A stretch of DNA of 64,000 nt from Macrostomum lignano (Eukaryota): contig NIVC01000854.1 in assembly GCA_002269645.1 (NCBI GenBank), positions 186,001 through 250,000 on the forward strand, written 5' to 3'. Shown here one piece after another: positions 30,501 to 58,685 of this stretch. A program made the translations under genes and the position numbers. The notes beneath the pieces were generated by a model, which did no database searches, was not told the DNA's origin, and saw only the letters and a list, made by a program, of their open reading frames with translations. Position 1 is the stretch's first letter. Each line of letters starts with the position of its first letter.

Positions 30501-32059
30501 AGATGACTGTCTTAGGAATATTTTCCATTTGCCCTTTTTTTTCTCTCTCACACGTAAAATGTCAATTGGGTAGGAACTGGGAGGCTACCACGTTCGCATC
30601 AAGAATCGGCTTCGCTGGTAAATCCATTGAAATCAGCATCGCATTCAGAGATTGCCTGCTTCAGCTTGGTCTGAATTGCAACTTTCATGCAATTGGTGTC
30701 CCAGCAGTGGCAGAAGGAGGAATAGCAGGTGGCGTAGCAAAAATATGCGTTTGCAATTTGTCTCTGCGTCATGCTGCAGGGGAGAAGATGTTCGATTCAT
30801 TCTTAGTGATTTTGCATTTATCCTTCAATCTGTGTATCGATTTTTTATCACGACCTTGTGCAGTTACACTTCTATTTATCCTAGTTTTTTATTTATGCAC
30901 AATTAACTGCTTTTAGGCTTGTCAGTGCCCAGAAGAGTCCCACTCCCCTCATTAAGCCTCGTCTGTCTCGTTTTGCTATCTTGCTATCAAGGCCGGGCTT
31001 TCCTAGAGGTGCCTGCCCTGATAACATGCTGCTTGTGATTTGCTGTTCCGGCAAGAAAAGCATTTAATGTTTGATAAGATGCTACCGCATTCCAAGAAAT
31101 TAAAAGCAGAGACGCTGCAGACAGACCATATAGAAGCAACTTTTGCAATGCTACTAGGTACGCTTATGCGCCAAAGATCGACCCAATAGCCTCAATTCCA
31201 ATTTCACAATAAAGTAGCCGAGCAAGAATCTGCAATACTTCCGTAATGATTCAATATCTGCATGTTATCTGCAGTTGCCTGGAATGTAGCACTTTTATGC
31301 GGCTCTCTTGACTAAGCTCAATTATAAACATGTTTACGTGAACCTGAGACCGAAAATTGATAGCTATTTTTAGCATTCAGTAGCCACAAGAAGTTGAAAT
31401 GAAAAAAACAACTCACGATGGCCGTGTGTGGACAAAGCATTCTCCGCCGCTGTGTTTGTAACAATGTAGTGCAAATGTGAAATAAATAGCAATGATAAAT
31501 GACAGTATTCATAGGTAATGCCTCTCGCCGGTTGTGTGCCAATGTCGCTTAAAGTGCGCTAGGGTGCACACAACCCCCTTGCCTCTAAAAAAAAAACACA
31601 GTCAGTTCCTACTGATACAGTTTCCACAAGCGCTATTATTACCGGCTATTCTCGATTCTGCTATTTCTGGCAATGATCGACATGTTTTGGTACCTACTAT
31701 ATCAACACACGTACAAAAGACACGTTAGGATGCGGAGGGACCACAGACCAATAAGTATAACTTATTGTTATACATATAACAATATATCATACATAAGTAG
31801 AAAAAACAAAACTAAGCTCTTGGGTGTGTCCCTGACTCCCCACGCATTTCTGAATCCAGAAATAATAATAGCAATAATCAATTGAACCTGTCCCAAATGG
31901 CCAGATGTGCAACCGACAACTCAGCCGCAGCTATTGCGCGGCATTATCTGAAGGCTGGGTACGGCTGTTCAGTCCAAGGACTAGGAGGGATCGGGAATCC
32001 AGCCTCCGACCTTTCGTTCGTGAGTCCGACGCTCTAACCACTAGGCTACAAACCCCTAC

Positions 32060-32700: not shown

Positions 32701-33681
32701 CAGATGACTGTGCCTGACGAATCTCTTTTAAATGTTCCCTTTGTTTTTCACTCTTAAAAATGGCAATTGGGTATAGGAAGGAACTGGGGGCTCCCAAGTT
32801 CGCGTCAAGAATTGGCTTCGCTGGTAAATCCTGGTTGAAATCAGCATCGCATTCAGAGAACGTGTCTTAGCAGTGGTAGAAGTAGCCAAGTGGCGTAGCA
32901 AAATATGTTTACAATTTGTCCCTGTGTCATGCTGTAGTGGAGAAGAGACCCACTCCCCTCCCTAAACCTCTGTCTCATTTTGCTATCTCAAGGCCGGTCT
33001 TTCCTATAATAGGTGCCTGCATCGAATGTACACCTGGACTACACTAGCTGCACTGATAACATGCCGCTCGTGCTTTGCTGTTCCGGTAGGATGCTACCAC
33101 ATTCCAAGAAATGCAGAAATTCAAAGCAGAGACGCTGCAGACATCATATATAAAGAAGCAACTTATTTAAAGAAGACCGAGTGGCCCCGAATGAAAACAC
33201 TTTCGCAATGCCTCCGCAATGCTTCAATATCTGCATGCTATTATCAGTTGCCTGAATGTAGCACTCTTTTGCATGTTTTTGACAAATTTCAGATAAATAT
33301 GTTTACGCTAACTTAATTTCGAAAATTAAGGCTCTTACGAGTACTTCGCTATTTTTAGCATTTATAACAAAGTCTAAATTCTGTTTCAGTTTCAACAGTC
33401 TAAACGATAGCTTTGTGTGAATAACAATAAATTGCAATAGATAGTAATGACTACTCGCAATGACAGAAAATGTACTACCTTGTAATTATTTTGATGCAGG
33501 GAATGAGCTTCCATGCGAGTTGCACATGTAGCAACATAAACTGACTGATTATAGCAATGATCTACATTGGTGCCTACTATATCAACACAGGCGGTTGAGT
33601 ACAAAAGACACGTGAGGATGCAGAGGAGGGGGGTTTCCAGGGCAAATCCGCGGCAAGGAGTCCCAGTTCCAGTGTCACAGC

Positions 33682-36519
33682 ATGACACAAACTGAAGCGG
33701 TGCTGGAAATCACACAACTGTTAGCGCTTGCGCTGGCAGTTGTCGCTCTGGCGACAGTTCTCATCGGGCTGGCGGTGCACCGCCGGTCCCAGCGGCCCCG
33801 TTTCCGGCGAGTCAGCAGCGACAGAAGACTCGTACGCGACACCTGGCAACGGAACGCGCCCTTAGTTGCTGATTTGATTCAGGCAAGAAACTATGCCGAG
33901 CTCGAAGCCATGGTCAAGGCCGGGCAGGCCGACCCCAACCAGAGGCGGGACGAACCCGGCGGGATGAGCAGCCCGATGCTGGTTGACGCGGTCGGCAATG
34001 GCGAGGTCAAGCTCGCCCAGGCGCTCATCGACCACCCCAGCATCGACTGCAACCTCAGCAGGGAGGACGGCACAACCCCCCTGATAATGGCCGCTAGCAG
34101 GGGACACGAGACACTGGTGGACTCGCTACTGAAGTTGCCTTCGCTTGACCTCAACGCCAGGAACAGCAACCAGTCCACGGCGCTGATCGTGTCGGCCAGA
34201 CCCGGGCACGCCACCATTGTGCGGATGCTGCTGGGTGCGGGCGTGGACAGGACCTGCGCGCAGTACAGGGGCCTCACCGCATTGCACTTTGCCTGTCGCG
34301 ATGGTCACCTGGAGATTGCGCAGTATTTGCTGTCAAACTGCGACAAGGAAACGATCAGACAGATGCTAGAGGCGCGGGACGAGAACGGGTTCACTCCTCT
34401 GATGTACAGTTGCCAGCGAGATCATCACACGGTCGCGCAGCTACTCCTGAACAACATGGACGGTGTGATTAGCAGCAGCAGTGATCATGGAACAGCTCTG
34501 CACGTAGCCGCCACGCATGACAGCAGCAAAACGATGAGGCTGCTGGTCGAGTCCGGAAAGCTGGACCCGAAAGCTACTGATTCAAGGGGTCGCACAGCTC
34601 TCGATGTCGCAGAGGTTCACGGAAGTCACAGCTGCGCACAGATTCTCAGCGCTAATTTGAACGGCACTCCGAGCTGCGACTCCAGCAAGATTTGCAAACT
34701 CTACCAGTTCGAATTGTTGGTGAACGAACAGGCAGTTCAACTGTCCTCTGAAGAGTTCTCGTTGAAGCTCCATCGCGCTATGCTCGACTCCGGCTACAGC
34801 AGCCACCGCGCAGTCTTCCAGGCTGGGGCGGCGGACCTCCTGGCCGAGCTGGGCAACATCTCAGAGCTGCGCGACCGATTCGACAAGCGCAAAGCGTCAG
34901 GAAGTTTCGCCGATGGCTGGGGCAGCAGCCTGCAGCGCCTGAACGGAAGCGTGGCCAGCAGTTCTGATGTTGACATGAGCGTGCAGCAGAAGAATCAAGT
35001 GCACGTTGAGGGCTCCTGCAAGTGTCTGGGTGCGCCAACCTACAGGCTGGAGGAGGGCTTCCTCAGACTGCCGGACGTGTGCGGGGACAAGCCCAGCAGG
35101 ACGGATATAGGCGTGGGAGTGCGGCCATCGATGGACTTCTGCTCGTTCCGGCCGAGCTGCTGCATCCCGATTGAGCTGCGCACAAGTCTGTCAAAGCTGC
35201 CAAAGCGATTTGAATTTCCGGCTAATCCGGAAGTGGAATTCGTCCGGTCTGTGCGACCGGAATGCACCGACGTGATGGAAATGCGCATCAGTTGCACTTC
35301 GTTGGAGAAGGCGATTCTTCGACAGCTGAGCACCTGCCAGGGCCAGGTATTCGTGCTTGTTAAGTACATATTCAAGCAAGTATTGGCTGCCAAAGGGCTG
35401 AAGTCCTACCACTCAAAGACGCTCATGTTCTATCTGGTGTGCGAGATTCCGGAGGAGCAATGGACGGCAGACAGGCTGGAGTGGCTGGTCGTTGCCGCTC
35501 TGCACCGTTTCGAGCAGTTCGTCATCGAGAGCGAAGAGTACGGAGCCTCAAACTGCATGCCGCACTTCTTCATCCGGGATGCCTGGGTGTACTTCAAGAC
35601 TGGCTCGGCCACTGACAGGCGAGCCCTCATTCGTTGCATGCAGGCGGCGCAGCGCGACGTGCGCTCGATTCTGGCGAGCTACATGAGCGAGCAGCTGCGG
35701 CCGCTGCGGCTCGGCTCGGAGTCGCCGTTCGTGTTCCAGCCGTTCAGCCTCATCGAACTCGTCACGCCGTTCAAGCGGCCGAAAAAACTCGAGTCGGGTC
35801 AGCTGGCCCGGTATCAGGATATTTATCCCATGCTGTTTAAAATCCTCGCCGACATTGGCAACCCGAGATGCACAGGTGAGCGCTGCGAAGATCTTAGTCG
35901 CGACATCGACTCTCTGCCGGAGAGAGCAGCCGCTACTGTTAGAGCGGTGCTAAGAGTGCTGCTACACCTGAAGCTTGGCAGTTTATCATCCGCCAGGCAG
36001 GTGCTAAAAGATTCCGAAGGCATTCAAGCGAAGAGAAGCATCGACTTCCAGCATCCCCAGTCTGTGGACGATGCCAAAAGAATTGTTCTCCATCAGCTGG
36101 AGACCAGCAACTGCGCTTGGAAGTTCTGCTTCTACTTTAATGAGAAGCTGGACTTCCGGTTCCTGTCCGATCACGTGACCAGCAAACTCGACGACTCGGC
36201 TTTCGGCTTCTACCAGCTGCCGGGCCACCTGCTGCTCGACTTCGCCTACTTTGTCAATTTCGATGCGGCGCTCAAAGTTCTCAGCATGTGTCTCATCCCG
36301 GAACGGTCCGCCGAGCTCGTGTCGCAGTGGTACTCGGAGCTGTGCTCTGAAGAGGACTCCGAGGACATCTACGAGTTGTACCTGTTCGCCAAGTTCTCGC
36401 GCGATGCTGAGCAGCTCAAGCACTGCCTGCTCAGAATGCGATCGTTGAGTATCAAAATGGACAAAGAGTTGGACATGATTGAGGAAGTTGAAAAGAGGCT
36501 GAAGTTGAAGAGAGGCTGA
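33682..36519 (+). CDS. Membrane-anchored ankyrin-repeat / cGAS-like (Mab-21 family) nucleotidyltransferase, 945 aa, single exon
   Basis: TM at about aa 11-31; about 7 ANK repeats (GTTPLIMAASRGH, GLTALHFACRDGH, GFTPLMYSC, GTALHVAA and others). NTase motifs: SGSFADGW...SDVDM, downstream MDF, MRISCTSLEKAIL, LVKYIFK, LKSYHSKTLMF, CMPHFFIRD. Confidence 0.9.
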   Translation: MTQTEAVLEITQLLALALAVVALATVLIGLAVHRRSQRPRFRRVSSDRRLVRDTWQRNAPLVADLIQARNYAELEAMVKAGQADPNQRRDEPGGMSSPMLVDAVGNGEVKLAQALIDHPSIDCNLSREDGTTPLIMAASRGHETLVDSLLKLPSLDLNARNSNQSTALIVSARPGHATIVRMLLGAGVDRTCAQYRGLTALHFACRDGHLEIAQYLLSNCDKETIRQMLEARDENGFTPLMYSCQRDHHTVAQLLLNNMDGVISSSSDHGTALHVAATHDSSKTMRLLVESGKLDPKATDSRGRTALDVAEVHGSHSCAQILSANLNGTPSCDSSKICKLYQFELLVNEQAVQLSSEEFSLKLHRAMLDSGYSSHRAVFQAGAADLLAELGNISELRDRFDKRKASGSFADGWGSSLQRLNGSVASSSDVDMSVQQKNQVHVEGSCKCLGAPTYRLEEGFLRLPDVCGDKPSRTDIGVGVRPSMDFCSFRPSCCIPIELRTSLSKLPKRFEFPANPEVEFVRSVRPECTDVMEMRISCTSLEKAILRQLSTCQGQVFVLVKYIFKQVLAAKGLKSYHSKTLMFYLVCEIPEEQWTADRLEWLVVAALHRFEQFVIESEEYGASNCMPHFFIRDAWVYFKTGSATDRRALIRCMQAAQRDVRSILASYMSEQLRPLRLGSESPFVFQPFSLIELVTPFKRPKKLESGQLARYQDIYPMLFKILADIGNPRCTGERCEDLSRDIDSLPERAAATVRAVLRVLLHLKLGSLSSARQVLKDSEGIQAKRSIDFQHPQSVDDAKRIVLHQLETSNCAWKFCFYFNEKLDFRFLSDHVTSKLDDSAFGFYQLPGHLLLDFAYFVNFDAALKVLSMCLIPERSAELVSQWYSELCSEEDSEDIYELYLFAKFSRDAEQLKHCLLRMRSLSIKMDKELDMIEEVEKRLKLKRG

Positions 36520-37559
36520 ACTTCAGGCTGAAGAGATTCTGAGCTCTCTAGGTAACGCTTCAGTGTACGAACTGCGTGCAAGGGTGACATGACAATCGGA
36601 CGCAAGCAGACAGCTGTTTTTTGAGTTTACCTTTTTCCTAGGACCTCCACGTCATCAAGGACCAGAATCTGTGTTTTAAGTCATACTTACTCACATGTTT
36701 GAAGATCCATCACTGTACACACGCCCATAGTAACAGAACATGCTTGTATATAAATGTACATTATTCATTACAAAAAGTTACGAGGGTTGTACAAAAAGCT
36801 GTGGAAATTAATAAACTAAGATCTGGTGGTATTTATTTCAAAACCATGTTTCCATTCATTATCTTAAATCTATGCCAATCCACCCAGCACACCAGTGCCC
36901 ACTGGCAATATTTTTCTGAAGCAAAAAATAAGAAGTGTAAAACAGGCAATTTGGTGACGAACATGACAGATACTAGCAGTGTGGAATCCAGCAAAATTAG
37001 TAGCAAGAAGACAGCAGAGGTGTACCAGTTAGATTAGAATCCACTCAGTGCTGTCAATGTGCATGTATTTCTTCTATACGAATTTCTATTATATTTATAA
37101 CTACAATGTGCTTAATATACTGCTTTACGTTCCAGTAATTTAGTAGCAAAGAAAGAAAAGTTGAAAAAACAGACGAACAACAAAAATTTGATTGCTGCGG
37201 ATTAAAACAAAACAAAATTATAATATAGTCGCTTTCGGCCGAATGCCGACGCTACTACTCACGAGCAACTATAAGTAGTATCTAGAGAAAGAATTAGAAA
37301 ATTACTATCCGCGGCAAATTAAAATTAGCGAAGAAATCTATTAATTTTCAAGTGTTCAACGCGCACTTCAAAAGCAACATTGGCGGTCGATATAATTTTC
37401 ATATTAAGGAGTCTGGGAGCAACATCAAGCCACTGCAATTCCTGCATTACGAAGTAGTAGACTGCTGTCTTATTAGTTAGACCCCATCGACATTGTTGCA
37501 AGGGACATCTTGACTAATTTAAAAGCTTAACAGACGCATTTATATGAAATTACAACGCA

Positions 37560-43366: not shown

Positions 43367-43523
43367 ATATTGCAGAAACTAATTTCAAGTTAGTTTTACC
43401 AATGTTGATCTGCAAGTGCTAGCTGATGATATGAGCCAGACTGCCTCTAGTAAGTGATAAAGTCAAAGAACAAAGTTTTTAGTCATCTTTAGTAATAGCA
43501 CATATAGGTTGCCAACTTCCTAT

Positions 43524-44530
43524 TTTTTTATTAGAGACAGGGGGTTGTGTGCACCCTGGCACACTTTAAGCAACAAAGGCACACAACCGGCGAGAGGCAT
43601 TACTGCCCATTCCACTGACTCCCCTAAGTAGGCATACAAGCACGCGGATACGTAGCACGCGAAGGCATATTCAGCATGCCAGTGAAGTATGAGACAGACT
43701 AGGCCTACGAGCTAAGGTCTGCGATGCTTCACGCCTGCCCCTATCTTTAGCAGGTCAAGGCTAGTGGGAGGTCTGCACCCTCTATTTGCCTCTGGCAGCC
43801 GCAGACTCTCCCACGCTGTCTCGCAAGTTGACCCAGGGGTACTCGTCCCCGCGTGTGTTCAAGGCAGACCCTAGGGCTACTGGACAGATTGGGCTCCGGC
43901 GCTGGCAACCCTATCCAGTGGCTTTGGCCAAATTTGGGTATGCGGGTCTGGCTTGCCAGCTTGCAGGCCATGGTACTGCTTAATGTACCCTCTAATGCCT
44001 AAGGTATTTGACCGTGCCGATGGGCTGGAAGGCCGGGGAGTAGTCTGGTTGCTAGCAGTCCTTTTTCAAACCGGCTGGCTTGAGGTGTTGGCCAGTCGGG
44101 TACTCAACTCGCATAACGAGTAGCCCTCCCCCCGCGTTTTAGCTATGGCCACTAGATAGGACCGGCAGACCTCTCTGACCAGCCCCGCGCCCTAGCCTAT
44201 GCGGGTCTTTCAGGGATTAGCGGAATGGGCAACGCTCGCCTCCCCGCTGCATCTTTGGACCACCCTGCAGCTAAGTCAAGTAAGTCAAAACGCGGATACA
44301 TACACAGGCACACACTCACATAGGAGTGTACAGTGGCCCTAACTTTATTTATCATTAGGCATGTACACTTCACTGCGCCTTGGGGGGTTGGCTCTCAAGG
44401 CTGCTAATTGCACGAGCAGAGCAAAGCCAAGATTCTAATTTAGTCCCAAATTAATGTGACTGCACTTGGAATTGAGCGTGGGTCGCTGGCACACTAGAGC
44501 TTGCGCTAGACTGCTGGGCTATGGCCCCCC
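43524..44530 (-). mobile_element. tRNA-derived SINE (family 2) interrupted by a 638-bp insertion
   Basis: 14-bp TSD TGCCAACTTCCTAT (43510-43523 and 44531-44544); homologous to 48611-48971; poly-T at the left end. Confidence 0.85.
43652..44289 (+). mobile_element. Probable 5'-truncated LINE fragment inserted in the SINE
   Basis: Flanked by a 10-bp duplication ACGCGGATAC; ends in (TAAGTCAA)x2; LACQLAGHG resembles the post-RT Q.LTGHG motif of some LINE clades. Confidence 0.5.
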
Positions 44531-47959: not shown

Positions 47960-49060
47960 AGTGCAGCAAAAAATTAATATTCAATAGGTGCAATATCTTA
48001 GGCTATATGGTAAAGAAGAACCTCCCAACCCAGTGCCAGCTACAGCAGGTTCTCCCAGGTTAACCAAGCCTTGTAGGCCAGTGCTTTGTCATGCAGCAAG
48101 ATGACTTTGTGACATTCTGAGTGCTTCTTGGTCAAAGCCTGATGTAGACAGTCTAGTTGCTGCTGATAATAGTTGGTAATGATGATCTGGTTCTTAGGTA
48201 GCACTTCCCATATCACAATTTCTTTGGCATCCCAGAAGACAGACAGACAGCATGAGCCTCTTAGGATAAAGCCCACCCTTTGCCTTGCACTCTAGCTTCT
48301 CACTAAGGCTATACCACTGCTGCCTATAACAGACATTGAGATAAAAGTACCACTTATTGTCCCCAGTGATTATATTGTCTAGCTAGTCAGTTTGACACAA
48401 TTGACTGAGAAGAGAATGGGCAACTTCCATGTAGCTATCTAGGTCATAGACTACTAGCTTGTGTAGTATATAGCACTCAAGTTTAGCTTTCTTTTCTATC
48501 CAATGGAGTTGATCAGTGATGGTTGTCCAGTGAATGTTTAGTTGATCAGCTAACTCGCGTGTTGTCTGCCAACAGTGCCAATTCTCCATGAGGAGCACTT
48601 CTTGGACATTTTTTTATTAGAGGCAAGGGGTTGTGTGCACCCTGGCGCACTTTAGGCGACATAGACACACAACCGGCGAGAGGCATTACTGCCCATTCTG
48701 CCAACTCCCCTGAGCAGGCATACAAGCGTGCGGATATGTTACGCAGACACACACTCACACAGGAGTGTACAGCAGCCCTAACTTTATCAATTGTTAGGCA
48801 TGTACACTTCACTGTGCCTTGGGGGGGGGTTGGCTCTCAAGGCCATTAATTGCACAGGCAAGCCAAGCCGAAATTCCAACTCAGCCCCAAATTAATGTGG
48901 CTGCACTTGGAATTGAGCCTGGGTCGCGGCACACCAGAGCAGCTGCGCTACCGCTGGGCTACGCCCTCCCCCACTTCTAGGACATTGTCATTAAGTTCAG
49001 GTAGACACCCACTATGAGGTCTGTCCTCAAGGCCTAGTTTTCTATTCTAAAGTACAATTG
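47960..49060 (-). mobile_element. Mariner transposase relic, split by a SINE
   Basis: LEDRPHSGCLPELNDNVL / EN...QTTRELADQLNIHWTTI / LSVFWDAKEIVIWEVLPKNQII..YYQQQLDCL / VILLHDKA / LGWEVL / PYS..DIAP, colinear with mariner transposases. Confidence 0.85.
48611..48971 (-). mobile_element. tRNA-derived SINE (family 2), uninterrupted copy
   Basis: Head GGGGAGGGCGTAGCCCAGCGGTAGCGC...GGCTCAATTCC; A-rich tail; 15-bp TSD CACTTCT(T/A)GGACATT. Confidence 0.85.
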
Positions 49061-56925: not shown

Positions 56926-57434
56926 GTCCGCACTTTTATCTATGCAGGAATAAATCAGAATTATAATAGTTAATTACATGCAAAGCTCCTTGTGTGTTAT
57001 TTCAACATGTCCTATTTGAATATTGAAACACTGCTTTTACACAGGTTAATAGCAAAACAAAAATGCTTTTAGCTGATCAACTAAAAAACAAATCTGCTTT
57101 ACGAATAGTTATTTAATACTAATTTTTAGCTTAATAGAATGCATGCGCTGTCATTTCTCTTTTGCAGTGTCTGTCGGTTTGCACTTACATATCTGGCTAC
57201 TCAGTTAATAAATCTAATGTGCTACTGTCAGTAGTACTCGTAGTTTTAGCGATCTAACTATCATTTCAGTTTTATTCATACCTTAACTGTCAATCATCTT
57301 CGCCTTGCCTGCTCCACCAACTAAATACTGTTTTAAATCTGGTTCCGTTGAAATATAAAATATAAATGAACGATTTTTAACATTCTGAGTGAGTGCATGT
57401 GCTCAAGTCTGGCGTCTCGTTTGAACTTCTGATC

Positions 57435-58685
57435 GCCCCTCAGCCATCTCTAAAGAATCGCTCCTCAGCCATCTCTAAAGAATCGCTCCTCAGCCATCTC
57501 TAAAGAATCGCCTCTCAGCCATCTCTAAAGAATCGCCTCTCAGCCATCTCTAAAGAATCGCCTCTCAGCCATCTCTAAAGAATCGCCCCTCAGCCATCTC
57601 TAAAGAATCGCCCCTCAGCTAACTCTAAAGAATCGCCTCTCAGCCATCTCTAAAGAATCGCTCCTCAGCCATCTCTAAAGAATCGCCCCTCAGCCATCTC
57701 TAAAGAATCGCCCCTCAGCCAACTCTAAAGAATCGCCCCTCAGCCATCTCTAAAGAATCGCCCCTCAGCCAACTCTAAAGAATCGCCCCTCAGCCATCTC
57801 TAAAGAATCGCCTCTCAGCCATCTCTAAAGAATCGCCTCTCAGCCATCTCTAAAGAATCGCCTCTCAGCCATCTCTAAAGAATCGCCTCTCAGCCATCTC
57901 TAAAGAATCGCCCCTCAGCCATCTCTAAAGAATCGCCTCTCAGCCATCTCTAAAGAATCGCTCCTCAGCCATCTCTAAAGAATCGCCCCTCAGCCATCTC
58001 TAAAGAATCGCCCCTCAGCCAACTCTAAAGAATCGCCCCTCAGCCATCTCTAAAGAATCGCCTCTCAGCCATCTCTAAAGAATCGCCCCTCAGCCATCTC
58101 TAAAGAATCGCCCCTCAGCCATCTCTAAAGAATCGCCCCTCAGCCAACTCTAAAGAATCGCCTCTCAGCCATCTCTAAAGAATCGCCCCTCAGCCATCTC
58201 TAAAGAATCGCCCCTTAGCCAACTCTAAAGAATCGCCCCTCAGCCATCTCTAAAGAATCGCCCCTCAGCCAACTTTAAAGAATCGCCCTCAGCCAACTCT
58301 AAAGAATCGCCCCTCAGCCATCTCTAAAGAATCGCCCCTCAGCCATCTCTAAAGAATCGCCCCTCAGCCATCTCTAAAGAATCGCCCCTCAGCCAACTCT
58401 AAAGAATCGCCCCTCAGCCATCTCTAAAGAATCGCCCCTCAGCCATCTCTAAAGAATCGCCCCTCAGCCAACTCTAAAGAATCGCCTCTCAGCCATCTCT
58501 AAAGAATCGCCCCTCAGCCAACTCTAAAGAATCGCCTCTCAGCCATCTCTAAAGAATCGCCCCTCAGCTAACTCTAAAGAATCGCCTCTCAGCCATCTCT
58601 AAAGAATCGCCCCTCAGCCATCTCTAAAGAATCGCCCCGTAGTAAAATCTAAAAAATTGCCCCTCAGCCAACTCAAAAGAATCGC
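57435..58685. repeat. 25-bp minisatellite (CAGCCATCTCTAAAGAATCGCCCCT)
   Basis: About 50 units ending about 65 nt before the RPS11 ATG. Confidence 0.96.

What the first reader, a model, noticed from the sequence alone, without database searches (positions are those of the whole stretch)
33682..36519. Membrane-tethered ankyrin-repeat cGAS-like receptor (TM-ANK-cGLR) with intact catalytic motifs
Seen: an N-terminal hydrophobic helix followed by a basic stop-transfer (HRRSQRPRFRR), about 7 ankyrin repeats, then an NTase core with GS (34900-34905), DVD (34966-34974), a third Asp (about 35134), the RIS..S.EK helix, SYHSKT and CMPHFF Mab-21 C-lobe motifs, and a helical tail. Established: Mab-21/cGLR enzymes with this acidic triad can make cyclic dinucleotide immune signals, and ankyrin repeats are protein-binding modules. 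Inference: a membrane-anchored sensor whose ANK array gates nucleotide second-messenger synthesis, possibly by recognising proteins rather than nucleic acid. Flatworms have often been described as lacking cGAS-STING, so the product and its receptor may be new.
Basis: partly seen in the sequence, partly recalled or inferred. Interest (0 to 1): 0.8.

Follow-up and report, generated by a model that had tools for sequence, protein, structure and literature searches.

The report
Membrane-anchored ankyrin cGAS-like enzyme, flatworm
This is an intact, intronless gene for a cGAS-like immune-type signalling enzyme fused to ankyrin repeats and a membrane anchor; it belongs to a large gene family of the flatworm Macrostomum that was already catalogued in 2023 but whose trigger, product and receptor are still unknown.

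Summary
Window 33682-36519 (+) is one 945-codon ORF. It encodes an N-terminal TM helix with a basic stop-transfer, about 7 ankyrin repeats, a cGAS/Mab-21-fold nucleotidyltransferase and a conserved ~300-aa helical C-terminal domain. An alignment-based AlphaFold model (pLDDT 85) matches human and mouse cGAS and invertebrate cGLRs at Foldseek probability 1.00. Profile-profile alignment puts G407-S408, D429/D431 and D485 on cGAS G212-S213, E225/D227 and D319. The nucleotide-contact motifs (RxS..EK, K, SYHxK) are also kept.

The novelty claim is overstated. The protein belongs to a greatly expanded Macrostomum lignano family (76 representatives below 1e-10). Li et al. 2023 already listed that family among ANK-fused cGLRs. 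They also cloned five members, without ANK, for their 140-protein screen, and none is marked as one of the 15 active enzymes.

What is different here is the predicted TM anchor, which the nearest paralog lacks, and the intronless gene. The core is mildly acidic (pI 6.1) and lacks the cGAS zinc thumb.

The best reading is a membrane-tethered, cytosol-facing cGLR that a non-nucleic-acid cue switches on to make a nucleotide second messenger. Activity, ligand, product and receptor are all untested.

The parts
33682..36519 (+). Complete single-exon CDS, 945 aa plus stop: TM-ANK-cGLR protein
   Evidence: ORF list. In-frame stop 23 codons upstream; GC3 0.74. tblastn finds no second copy in the window.
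33718..33777 (+). Predicted transmembrane signal-anchor helix (aa ~13-32, LLALALAVVALATVLIGLAV)
   Evidence: Kyte-Doolittle 19-residue mean peaks at 2.83 at aa 14-32. The N-flank has net charge -2.
33778..33810 (+). Basic stop-transfer / positive-inside cluster HRRSQRPRFRR (aa 33-43), opening a basic linker (aa 33-95, pI 11.5)
   Evidence: aa 33-60 hold 10 K+R against 2 D+E. By the positive-inside rule the C-terminal bulk is cytosolic (inference).
33967..34671 (+). Ankyrin-repeat array, about 7 repeats (aa ~96-330)
   Evidence: Pfam Ank_2 1.6e-36, Ank_5, Ank_4, Ank, Ank_3. PDB ankyrin-1/2 E=7e-67. Repeat registers listed.
34735..35616 (+). cGAS/Mab-21-fold nucleotidyltransferase catalytic domain (aa ~352-645: spine helices, N-lobe, C-lobe)
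   Evidence: AF2 model pLDDT 85, pTM 0.87. Foldseek top hits are cGAS, Cv-cGLR1, Sp-cGLR1, MB21D2 and MiD51, prob 1.00, 340-420 aligned columns. hhalign 98.4-98.6% against a cGAS/cGLR profile. hmmsearch against PDB cGAS E=4.6e-7.
34900..34905 (+). G407-S408, NTase 'GS' motif
   Evidence: Aligns to human cGAS G212-S213. G in 83/85 and S in 83/85 family domains.
34966..34974 (+). D429-V-D431, first two catalytic acidic residues
   Evidence: Aligns to cGAS E225-F-D227. D in 80/84 and 79/86 family domains. Lies on a predicted beta-strand directly after the GS helix.
35134..35136 (+). D485, third catalytic Asp (RPSMD)
   Evidence: Falls in the same hhalign column as human cGAS D319 (ISVDITLAL), in the confident part of the alignment. 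D in 74/81 family domains.
35284..35310 (+). R535-I-S537-C-T-S-L-E542-K: equivalent of cGAS WRLSFSHIEK (nucleotide-contact strand/helix)
   Evidence: hhalign. R in 97/102, S in 94/99 and E in 95/98 family domains.
35335..35580 (+). Mab-21_C (HhH/H2TH-like) C-lobe, including K561, K565, S575-Y-H-S-K579 and C625-MPHFF
   Evidence: Pfam PF20266, 26.2 bits against a cutoff of 24.1. phmmer to Sp-cGLR1 8gjy E=1.9e-4. K561 in 101/102 and K579 in 100/102 family domains.
35617..36516 (+). Family-specific C-terminal helical domain (aa 646-945; conserved FHPF, YHxIYD, DSAWKFCF and FYxNFxALL blocks)
   Evidence: Conserved over its whole length in M. lignano relatives. Modelled at pLDDT ~85-95 as helices plus a small sheet. 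No Pfam, PDB-sequence or BFVD match.
36810..36815 (+). AATAAA, candidate polyadenylation signal 291 nt after the stop
   Evidence: Pattern scan. Consensus match only.

Best explanation
The ORF encodes a membrane-tethered, cytosol-facing member of the Macrostomum ANK-cGLR family of cGAS-like receptors.

Topology: an N-terminal signal-anchor helix (N-terminus out, C-terminus in) holds the protein on an endomembrane or the plasma membrane. The ankyrin array, the NTase and the family-specific C-terminal domain face the cytosol.

Mechanism, by analogy with cGAS and the cGLRs: the enzyme rests inactive. Binding of a ligand to the ANK array, the C-terminal domain or the core surface reorders the GS/activation loop. 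The ligand is probably a protein or another non-nucleic-acid cue. The D429/D431/D485 metal site then condenses NTPs into a cyclic di- or oligonucleotide second messenger, which a downstream receptor reads as an immune or stress signal.

Shown here: the fold, the domain order, the conservation and placement of catalytic residues, family membership and the family expansion.

Inferred: membrane insertion and topology, catalytic activity, ligand class, product, receptor and an immune role.
For: Fold: the AF2 model built with a family alignment has pLDDT 85 and pTM 0.87. All of the top ~50 Foldseek PDB hits are cGAS, cGLR, MB21D2 or MiD51 at prob 1.00, for example Cv-cGLR1 8gjw with E=6e-7 and TMt 0.57.

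Active site: hhalign gives 98.4-98.6% probability. G407S408, D429/D431 and D485 map to cGAS G212S213, E225/D227 and D319. RISxxxEK, K561 and SYHSK map to WRLSFSHIEK, K414 and SYHVK.

Selection on catalysis: family paralogs are only about 31% identical to each other, yet 56 of 66 domains that cover all the catalytic columns keep the full G[SG] + three-acidic signature. The nucleotide-contact residues are 92-99% conserved, apart from K565 and H577 (~85%).

Lineage-specific expansion: 76 representatives at 50% clustering score below 1e-10, and all 17 family representatives (E up to 4.4e-4) that I looked up are from M. lignano. This is the pattern of innate-immune receptor families.

Topology: the TM segment scores KD 2.83, with flank charges of -2 (N side) against +10/-2 (C side).

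Non-nucleic-acid ligand: the core pI is 6.14, whereas Li et al. report pI above 8.5 for dsDNA- and dsRNA-sensing cGLRs. There is no Zn-thumb insert. Five ANK-less relatives are not among the enzymes that were active with poly I:C + ISD45.

Gene integrity: uninterrupted 945 codons, GC3 0.74, AATAAA downstream.
Against: - No biochemical activity is known for any member. The five M. lignano relatives screened by Li et al. carry no 'active' note. That could equally mean the family is not a cyclase, or that those proteins misfolded.
- Pfam's Mab-21 N-lobe model PF03281 does not recognise the sequence. The GS-to-DxD spacing is 20 residues, against 11 in cGAS, because of the family-specific insert EGWGxSL..DG. 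The hhalign confidence for the GS/DxD part is low.
- I could not inspect model coordinates, so the active-site geometry was not measured.
- The query has lost two residues that are otherwise conserved in the family: H460 is F and H519 is E.
- No transcript evidence is available.
- No STING or other receptor could be searched for in this genome.
- The TM helix was predicted from hydropathy alone, and the nearest paralog lacks one.
Confidence: 0.55

Rival explanations
1. Nucleotide-binding pseudo-enzyme or scaffold. A membrane-anchored Mab-21-fold adaptor, like MiD49/MiD51 on the mitochondrial outer membrane, uses the ANK array to recruit partners, binds a nucleotide as a cofactor and makes no messenger.
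For: MiD51 (4nxu) is among the structural hits and, from my own knowledge, shares the layout of an N-terminal TM anchor plus a Mab-21 fold. Five relatives showed no noted activity in the Li et al. screen. About 15% of family domains (10/66) have lost catalytic residues, including the caspase-fused P0067, so non-catalytic roles do exist in the family.
Against: The window protein keeps every catalytic and nucleotide-contact residue. These are the most conserved positions in a family that has otherwise diverged to about 30% identity. That is hard to explain without selection on catalysis. MiD49/51 lack the catalytic acidic triad (my own knowledge, not tested here). cGAS and cGLR rank above MiD51 in Foldseek.
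Confidence: 0.17
2. Active nucleotidyltransferase with a different chemistry. It makes OAS-like linear 2'-5' oligonucleotides, or nucleotidylates another acceptor, rather than making a STING-type cyclic dinucleotide.
For: The Pol-beta NTase triad and the GS motif are shared by OAS, cGAS and CD-NTases, so sequence alone does not fix the product. The longer GS-to-DxD insert and the extra 300-aa C-terminal domain are not cGAS-like. Other flatworms lack STING, so a STING-independent output is plausible.
Against: The closest sequence and structure relatives are cGAS and cGLRs, not OAS. The cGAS-type acceptor/donor contact motifs WRLSFS..EK and SYHxK are conserved.
Confidence: 0.18
3. The N-terminal hydrophobic segment is not a stable membrane anchor. 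It could be a cleaved signal peptide or an annotation artefact of the start codon, leaving the mature protein soluble like its paralogs.
For: The nearest paralog locus (P0077/P0002) starts MTEPRRSDC... with no TM. Only one other family representative (P0013) has a TM-like segment upstream of ANK. An AG dinucleotide sits 1 nt before the ATG, so an upstream or trans-spliced exon cannot be excluded.
Against: The hydrophobic stretch is about 20-23 residues long with KD 2.83, longer and more hydrophobic than a typical signal-peptide h-region. It is followed at once by 6 Arg in 11 residues, with no small-residue cleavage motif. ANK repeats and cGLR domains are cytosolic modules. An in-frame stop lies 23 codons upstream with no alternative ATG.
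Confidence: 0.1

Closest known systems
Macrostomum lignano ANK-cGLR family (e.g. PAA75531.1 = P0002, PAA65033.1, PAA66982.1, PAA45980.1), catalogued in Li et al. [quoted passage not shown]
   Same: The same ~570-aa module (NTase core, Mab-21_C, conserved C-terminal helical domain) preceded by ankyrin repeats. The same GSxxEGWGxSL...SDxD, RPxxD, RxSxxxEK, KxxxK, SYHxK and MPHFF motifs. The query nests inside the family tree as sister to P0002. Dispersed repeats shared at 89-95% nt identity indicate the same or a sibling species.
   Different: Only 27-32% identical to any member over the shared module alignment, or 32-36% over locally matched stretches for the best hits, and not on record as an annotated protein. 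It has an N-terminal TM anchor that the nearest paralog lacks. It is intronless, whereas the P0002 locus has at least 4 exons. Two family-conserved His are replaced: H460 by F and H519 by E.
cGAS and animal cGLRs with solved structures (human/mouse cGAS; Cv-cGLR1 8gjw; Sp-cGLR1 8gjy; human MB21D2 7lt1)
   Same: Bilobed Mab-21/cGAS NTase fold, the GS + E/D-x-D + D catalytic signature and the nucleotide-contact motifs.
   Different: Only 12-15% identity. No Zn-thumb insert. A 20-residue GS-to-DxD spacing. A mildly acidic core (pI 6.1). Extra TM, ANK and 300-aa C-terminal domains. The product and ligand are unknown.
ANK-fused cGLRs of corals (Stylophora pistillata) noted in Li et al. 2023, Fig. 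1C/4C
   Same: Ankyrin repeats fused to a cGLR core, proposed there as protein- or ligand-interaction modules.
   Different: No evidence of common origin of the fusion. The flatworm family has its own C-terminal domain, and this member has a TM anchor. Neither group has been characterised functionally.
MiD49/MiD51 (mitochondrial dynamics proteins; MiD51 structure 4nxu)
   Same: An N-terminal TM anchor followed by a cytosolic Mab-21-fold domain. MiD51 is a Foldseek hit (rank 50, TMt 0.54).
   Different: From my own knowledge, MiD proteins lack the catalytic triad and act as Drp1 adaptors. Here the triad is intact and an ANK array is inserted between the anchor and the core.

Membership tests
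cGAS-like receptors (cGLR; Mab-21/cGAS NTase superfamily) | Bilobed cGAS/Mab-21 nucleotidyltransferase fold | tested here: met
   AF2 model pLDDT 85. Foldseek prob 1.00 to cGAS, Cv-cGLR1 and Sp-cGLR1 over 340-420 columns. hhalign 98.6%. Pfam Mab-21_C above its cutoff. Caveat: Pfam PF03281 (N-lobe) is not detected.
cGAS-like receptors (cGLR; Mab-21/cGAS NTase superfamily) | Catalytic signature h[G][S]...[E/D]h[E/D]...[D] in the N-lobe | tested here: met
   G407S408, D429, D431 and D485 align to cGAS G212S213, E225, D227 and D319. The signature is kept in 56/66 family domains. The 3-D geometry was not measured because no coordinates were available.
cGAS-like receptors (cGLR; Mab-21/cGAS NTase superfamily) | Synthesis of a cyclic (oligo)nucleotide second messenger | not testable with these tools
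   Needs biochemistry. The only related data: five M. lignano relatives in the Li et al. screen are not flagged as active.
cGAS-like receptors (cGLR; Mab-21/cGAS NTase superfamily) | Ligand-dependent activation (pattern recognition) | not testable with these tools
   Only indirect evidence: pI 6.1 and no Zn thumb argue against a nucleic-acid ligand.
cGAS-like receptors (cGLR; Mab-21/cGAS NTase superfamily) | A cognate downstream receptor (STING or other) in the same genome | not tested
   Only 64 kb of the genome is available. No STING-like ORF was seen in the window, which is mostly tandem repeats. I found no literature on STING in Macrostomum. Planarians lack it.
Macrostomum ANK-cGLR family | Full ~570-aa module including the family-specific C-terminal helical domain, preceded by ANK repeats | tested here: met
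   End-to-end phmmer alignments to M. lignano proteins, E down to 1e-103. Conserved blocks through aa 925. Placed inside the family tree.
Ankyrin-repeat proteins | Tandem 33-residue ANK repeats | tested here: met
   Five Pfam ANK models, E from 1e-19 to 1e-36. PDB ankyrins and DARPins.
Single-pass signal-anchored membrane proteins | One hydrophobic helix of about 20 residues with asymmetric flanking charge | tested here: inconclusive
   The hydropathy and charge criteria are met. No dedicated TM or signal-peptide predictor and no experiment were available.
MiD49/MiD51-type Mab-21 adaptors | Mab-21 fold with a degenerate (non-catalytic) active site | tested here: not met
   All three acidic residues and GS are present and conserved.

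The most novel reading that the evidence does not exclude
This is a membrane-resident cGLR that senses a protein or membrane-associated cue through its ANK array or C-terminal domain, and that signals with a nucleotide messenger to a non-STING receptor, in a phylum otherwise thought to have lost cGAS-STING. The roughly 70-cluster Macrostomum expansion would then be a diversified protein-sensing cGLR repertoire, analogous to NLR expansions.
Probability: 0.15. Interest if true: 0.8.

Novelty: new variant of a known kind. Interest (0 to 1): 0.42.

Why it matters
Animal cGLRs are a recently recognised family of pattern-recognition receptors. Most of them are orphans: they were inactive with dsDNA or dsRNA, and their ligands are unknown (Li et al. 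2023, Limitations section).

The Macrostomum ANK-cGLR radiation is one of the largest such orphan groups, and it sits in a phylum whose model species lack cGAS and STING altogether. Macrostomum lignano is, from my own knowledge, a genetically tractable flatworm.

A member with an intact active site, a protein-binding array and a membrane anchor is a concrete handle on three open questions:
- What do non-nucleic-acid cGLRs sense?
- Where in the cell do they sense it?
- What reads the signal when STING may be absent?

The value lies in making an open question testable rather than in discovering a new kind of protein. The family and the ANK fusion were already in the literature.

Tried and rejected
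1. The search for homologous proteins timed out twice. It then returned no scoring hits with a single sequence or with the family alignment, although family members are in NCBI nr. The word index does not reach this family. The exhaustive representative search and the cluster look-ups replaced it.

2. Single-sequence AlphaFold gave pLDDT 34 and was discarded.

3. Pfam on the N-lobe alone and on the C-terminal 279 aa alone gave no N-lobe model (only a sub-threshold Mab-21_C hit) and nothing at all, respectively.

4. The exact protein is not on record in the assembly index, so no transcript or ortholog context was obtained.

5. Foldseek against viral structures (BFVD) gave nothing below E=0.06. 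A viral origin or viral mimic is rejected.

6. I looked for other family copies or a gene cluster in the window and found none.

7. Other long ORFs in the window, including a 'WIF' Pfam hit at 6210-7925 and 'YmaF' at 22575-23597, lie inside tandem-repeat arrays and are artefacts.

8. Retrogene idea: the gene is intronless whereas its nearest paralog has introns. However, I saw no poly(A) tract after the AATAAA in the sequence read. This is left open and not adopted.

9. Mitochondrial outer-membrane targeting like MiD51 was considered. The TM is very hydrophobic (KD 2.83), which, from my own knowledge, favours ER/SRP targeting. This could not be decided.

10. Literature searches for characterised ANK-fused or TM-anchored cGLRs and for STING in Macrostomum found nothing relevant.
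Full report
**1. What is there**

Window 33682-36519 (+) is a single uninterrupted ORF of 945 codons, by far the longest in the 64-kb window.

- An in-frame TGA lies 23 codons upstream with no intervening ATG.
- GC3 is 0.74, while the flanks are about 44-47% GC.
- AATAAA lies 291 nt after the stop.

**2. Domains**

(a) N-terminal anchor. Residues 14-32 have a Kyte-Doolittle 19-residue mean of 2.83, and nothing else in the protein exceeds 1.6. The 12 residues before the helix carry a net charge of -2. The 28 residues after it hold 10 K+R against 2 D+E. By the positive-inside rule this is an N-out/C-in signal anchor, so everything downstream is cytosolic. This is an inference, because no dedicated predictor or experiment was available.

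(b) Ankyrin repeats. Seven repeats span aa ~96-330 (Pfam Ank_2 E=1.6e-36; PDB ankyrin E=7e-67).

(c) NTase. Pfam sees only the Mab-21 C-lobe (PF20266, 26.2 bits against a cutoff of 24.1, aa 552-633) and not the N-lobe model PF03281. phmmer of the non-ANK part hits only Sp-cGLR1 (8gjy) in the PDB. The NTase call therefore needed more sensitive methods, described in sections 3 and 4.

(d) C-terminal region. A further ~300 residues (aa 646-945) have no match in Pfam, PDB sequences or BFVD.

**3. Family**

An exhaustive phmmer search of 1.84 billion representatives with aa 331-945 found 112 hits. Of these, 76 are below 1e-10 and the best is 1.3e-103. Many align end to end over about 570 residues, including the C-terminal region.

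Twenty representatives were looked up. All 17 that belong to the family are Macrostomum lignano proteins, annotated only as hypothetical, 'ANK_REP_REGION' or 'Mab-21-like HhH/H2TH-like domain-containing'. The three weakest, which match mainly the C-lobe region, come from Lingula, from Lamellibrachia and from an unnamed ENA contig.

The window protein is only 27-32% identical to any of them over the module alignment (32-36% over locally matched stretches for the best hits). M. lignano subfamilies are just as far from each other, with a median of 31%. In a neighbour-joining tree the query nests inside the radiation as sister to P0002 (PAA75531.1).

The window shares a dispersed repeat with the M. 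lignano contig that carries P0002, at 89-95% nucleotide identity in four copies. The window is therefore from M. lignano or a very close relative, although this protein is not on record as an annotated product.

**4. Is it a cGAS-like enzyme?**

With a 16-sequence family alignment (A1), AlphaFold gave a confident single-body model with pLDDT 85 and pTM 0.87. The single-sequence attempt had failed at pLDDT 34.

Foldseek against the PDB returned only cGAS-superfamily structures in the top 50. These were human, mouse and porcine cGAS, Cv-cGLR1 8gjw (E=6e-7, TMt 0.57), Sp-cGLR1 8gjy, MB21D2 7lt1 and MiD51 4nxu, each at probability 1.00 over about 300-420 aligned columns. The family HMM hits cGAS sequences at E=4.6e-7.

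Profile-profile alignment to a small cGAS/cGLR alignment (A2) gives 98.6% probability. It places D485 (RPSMD) in the column of human cGAS D319, RISCTSLEK on WRLSFSHIEK, VKYIFK on LMKYLLEQLK, SYHSK on SYHVK and MPHFF on ENYFI.

With a relaxed threshold the alignment covers the whole cGAS catalytic domain. It puts G407-S408 on G212-S213 and D429/D431 on E225/D227. That N-lobe stretch has low per-column confidence, but the motif register is exact, and the model shows the expected strand, GS-helix, strand arrangement. The same alignment shows that the cGAS Zn-thumb insert is absent.

Across the family, 56 of 66 domains that cover the catalytic columns keep G[SG] plus all three acidic residues. R535, S537, E542, K561, Y576 and K579 are 92-99% conserved. 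In a family that has drifted to about 30% identity, this is the signature of selection on catalysis. I could not access the model coordinates, so the active-site geometry itself was not measured.

**5. What is already known**

Li et al. 2023 (PMC9980059) identified more than 3,000 animal cGLRs. [quoted passage not shown]

- Their Table S2 lists M. lignano PAA proteins with Ank_2 domains among the cGLRs.
- Their Table S3 shows that five M. lignano members (nos. 89-93) were cloned for the 140-protein screen: PAA86972.1, PAA45980.1, PAA57558.1, PAA93208.1 and PAA68676.1.
- The constructs start at the spine helix, so they lack the ANK repeats.
- The 'Note' column that marks the named active enzymes is empty for all five.
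- PAA45980.1 belongs to the cluster of my hit P0027.
- The screen supplied only poly I:C and a 45-bp dsDNA as ligands. The authors themselves say that many cGLRs appear inactive, probably for want of the right ligand.

I found no later paper that characterises ANK-fused or membrane-anchored cGLRs, and nothing on STING in Macrostomum. A 2026 planarian study reports no cGAS or STING homologs in Schmidtea.

**6. What is different about this member**

(i) TM anchor. The real N-terminus of the nearest paralog locus is MTEPRRSDC... and runs straight into ANK repeats with no hydrophobic segment. Only one other representative (P0013) has a TM-like segment upstream of its ANK repeats.

(ii) Gene structure. 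The gene is intronless, whereas the P0002 locus has at least four exons and a 3.7-kb intron that carries a repeat.

(iii) Lost histidines. Two His residues conserved in about 24/28 family members are both replaced: H460 by F and H519 by E.

(iv) Charge. The catalytic core is mildly acidic (pI 6.14; family median 7.4, range 5.3-9.7). This is well below the pI above 8.5 that Li et al. associate with nucleic-acid sensing.

**7. Most likely mechanism**

The best reading is a membrane-tethered, cytosol-facing cGLR that rests inactive. A non-nucleic-acid cue, bound by the ANK array, the C-terminal domain or the core, switches it on to synthesise a nucleotide second messenger. The large lineage-specific expansion, with a conserved active site and divergent remainder, fits an innate-immune sensor repertoire. 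I give this about 0.55.

Rivals:
- A MiD51-like non-catalytic scaffold (0.17). The conserved triad argues against it.
- An active NTase with OAS-like or other chemistry (0.18).
- The hydrophobic N-terminus is not a stable anchor (0.10).

One annotated M. lignano member (P0067, PAA93319.1) carries a C-terminal caspase domain (E=2.8e-27), which hints at a link to cell-death signalling. That gene model may be a fusion, and its NTase site is degenerate (D431 to N, D485 to T).

**8. Verdict**

The protein is a genuine, intact cGAS-like receptor with ANK repeats and a probable membrane anchor. It is a divergent new member of a Macrostomum family that is already catalogued but functionally orphan, with the TM anchor as the new twist. 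It is not a first cGLR in flatworms.

Interest is moderate. It offers a good experimental handle on an open question: what non-nucleic-acid cGLRs sense, and what receives their signal in a lineage where STING may be missing.

Noticed in passing
window 1-64000 (e.g. 2341-3915 (ATCA)n; 10073-11164 and 18574-19058 (CAGA)n; 6181-7482 30-bp unit; 57432-58685 25-bp unit): The window is saturated with micro- and minisatellites: 44 TRF rows with score of at least 300. They create long ORFs in several frames and spurious Pfam hits, such as 'WIF' at 6210-7925 and 'YmaF' at 22575-23597. They also explain the extreme GC/AT skews at 2-4 kb and 10-12 kb.
   Followed up: partly
window 26719-26932 (-): A short stretch with stop codons in its surroundings is 61-73% identical in protein to aa 293-361 of M. 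lignano P0074. The motif (..QLAGHIIHAESY..LLLTLQAPYRQGQPRTRRFVD..) looks like the C-terminal tail of a non-LTR retrotransposon reverse transcriptase. It is probably a decayed TE copy, and P0074 is probably a TE-contaminated gene model.
   Followed up: partly
window 48609-48978, 44291-44529, 43523-43654, 31515-31596; L001 12442-12812: Four copies of a dispersed repeat in the window match, at 89-95% nucleotide identity, an element inside the large intron of the M. lignano P0002 gene. This is the best clue to the source organism: M. lignano or a sibling species.
   Followed up: partly
L001 (M. lignano NIVC01000876.1) ~9000-16149: The annotated gene for P0002 (PAA75531.1) appears N-terminally truncated. 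ANK-encoding sequence and an ORF starting MTEPRRSDCAICMAED... lie just upstream. That ORF is identical to the start of P0077, which itself extends into the start of the module. The two models are probably one ANK-cGLR gene.
   Followed up: partly
P0067 (PAA93319.1, M. lignano), aa 1896-2107: A family member is annotated as ANK - cGLR module - ANK - caspase (Peptidase_C14, E=2.8e-27), and its NTase catalytic residues are degenerate. Either this is a sensor-effector fusion or adjacent genes were merged. P0057 (Delta/EGF) and P0022 (WSC, RING) look like merged gene models.
   Followed up: no
window 35059-35061 (F460) and 35236-35238 (E519): Two His residues conserved in about 24 of 28 family members (the 'GH' and 'CHLV' motifs) are both replaced in the window protein. 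The neighbouring conserved H441, C448 and C493 are kept. The family may have a Cys/His metal or structural site in the N-lobe that is remodelled here.
   Followed up: no
window 33668-33684: A pyrimidine-containing stretch ending in AG (..tcacag|c ATG) sits 1 nt before the start codon. This could be a (trans-)splice acceptor, as is common in Macrostomum (my own knowledge). It was not tested.
   Followed up: no
tool behaviour: The word-indexed protein search returned no scoring hits for this family, with a single sequence or with a 16-sequence alignment, although its M. lignano members are in NCBI nr and UniRef. A negative result from that tool should not be read as absence for divergent eukaryotic families.
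   Followed up: yes
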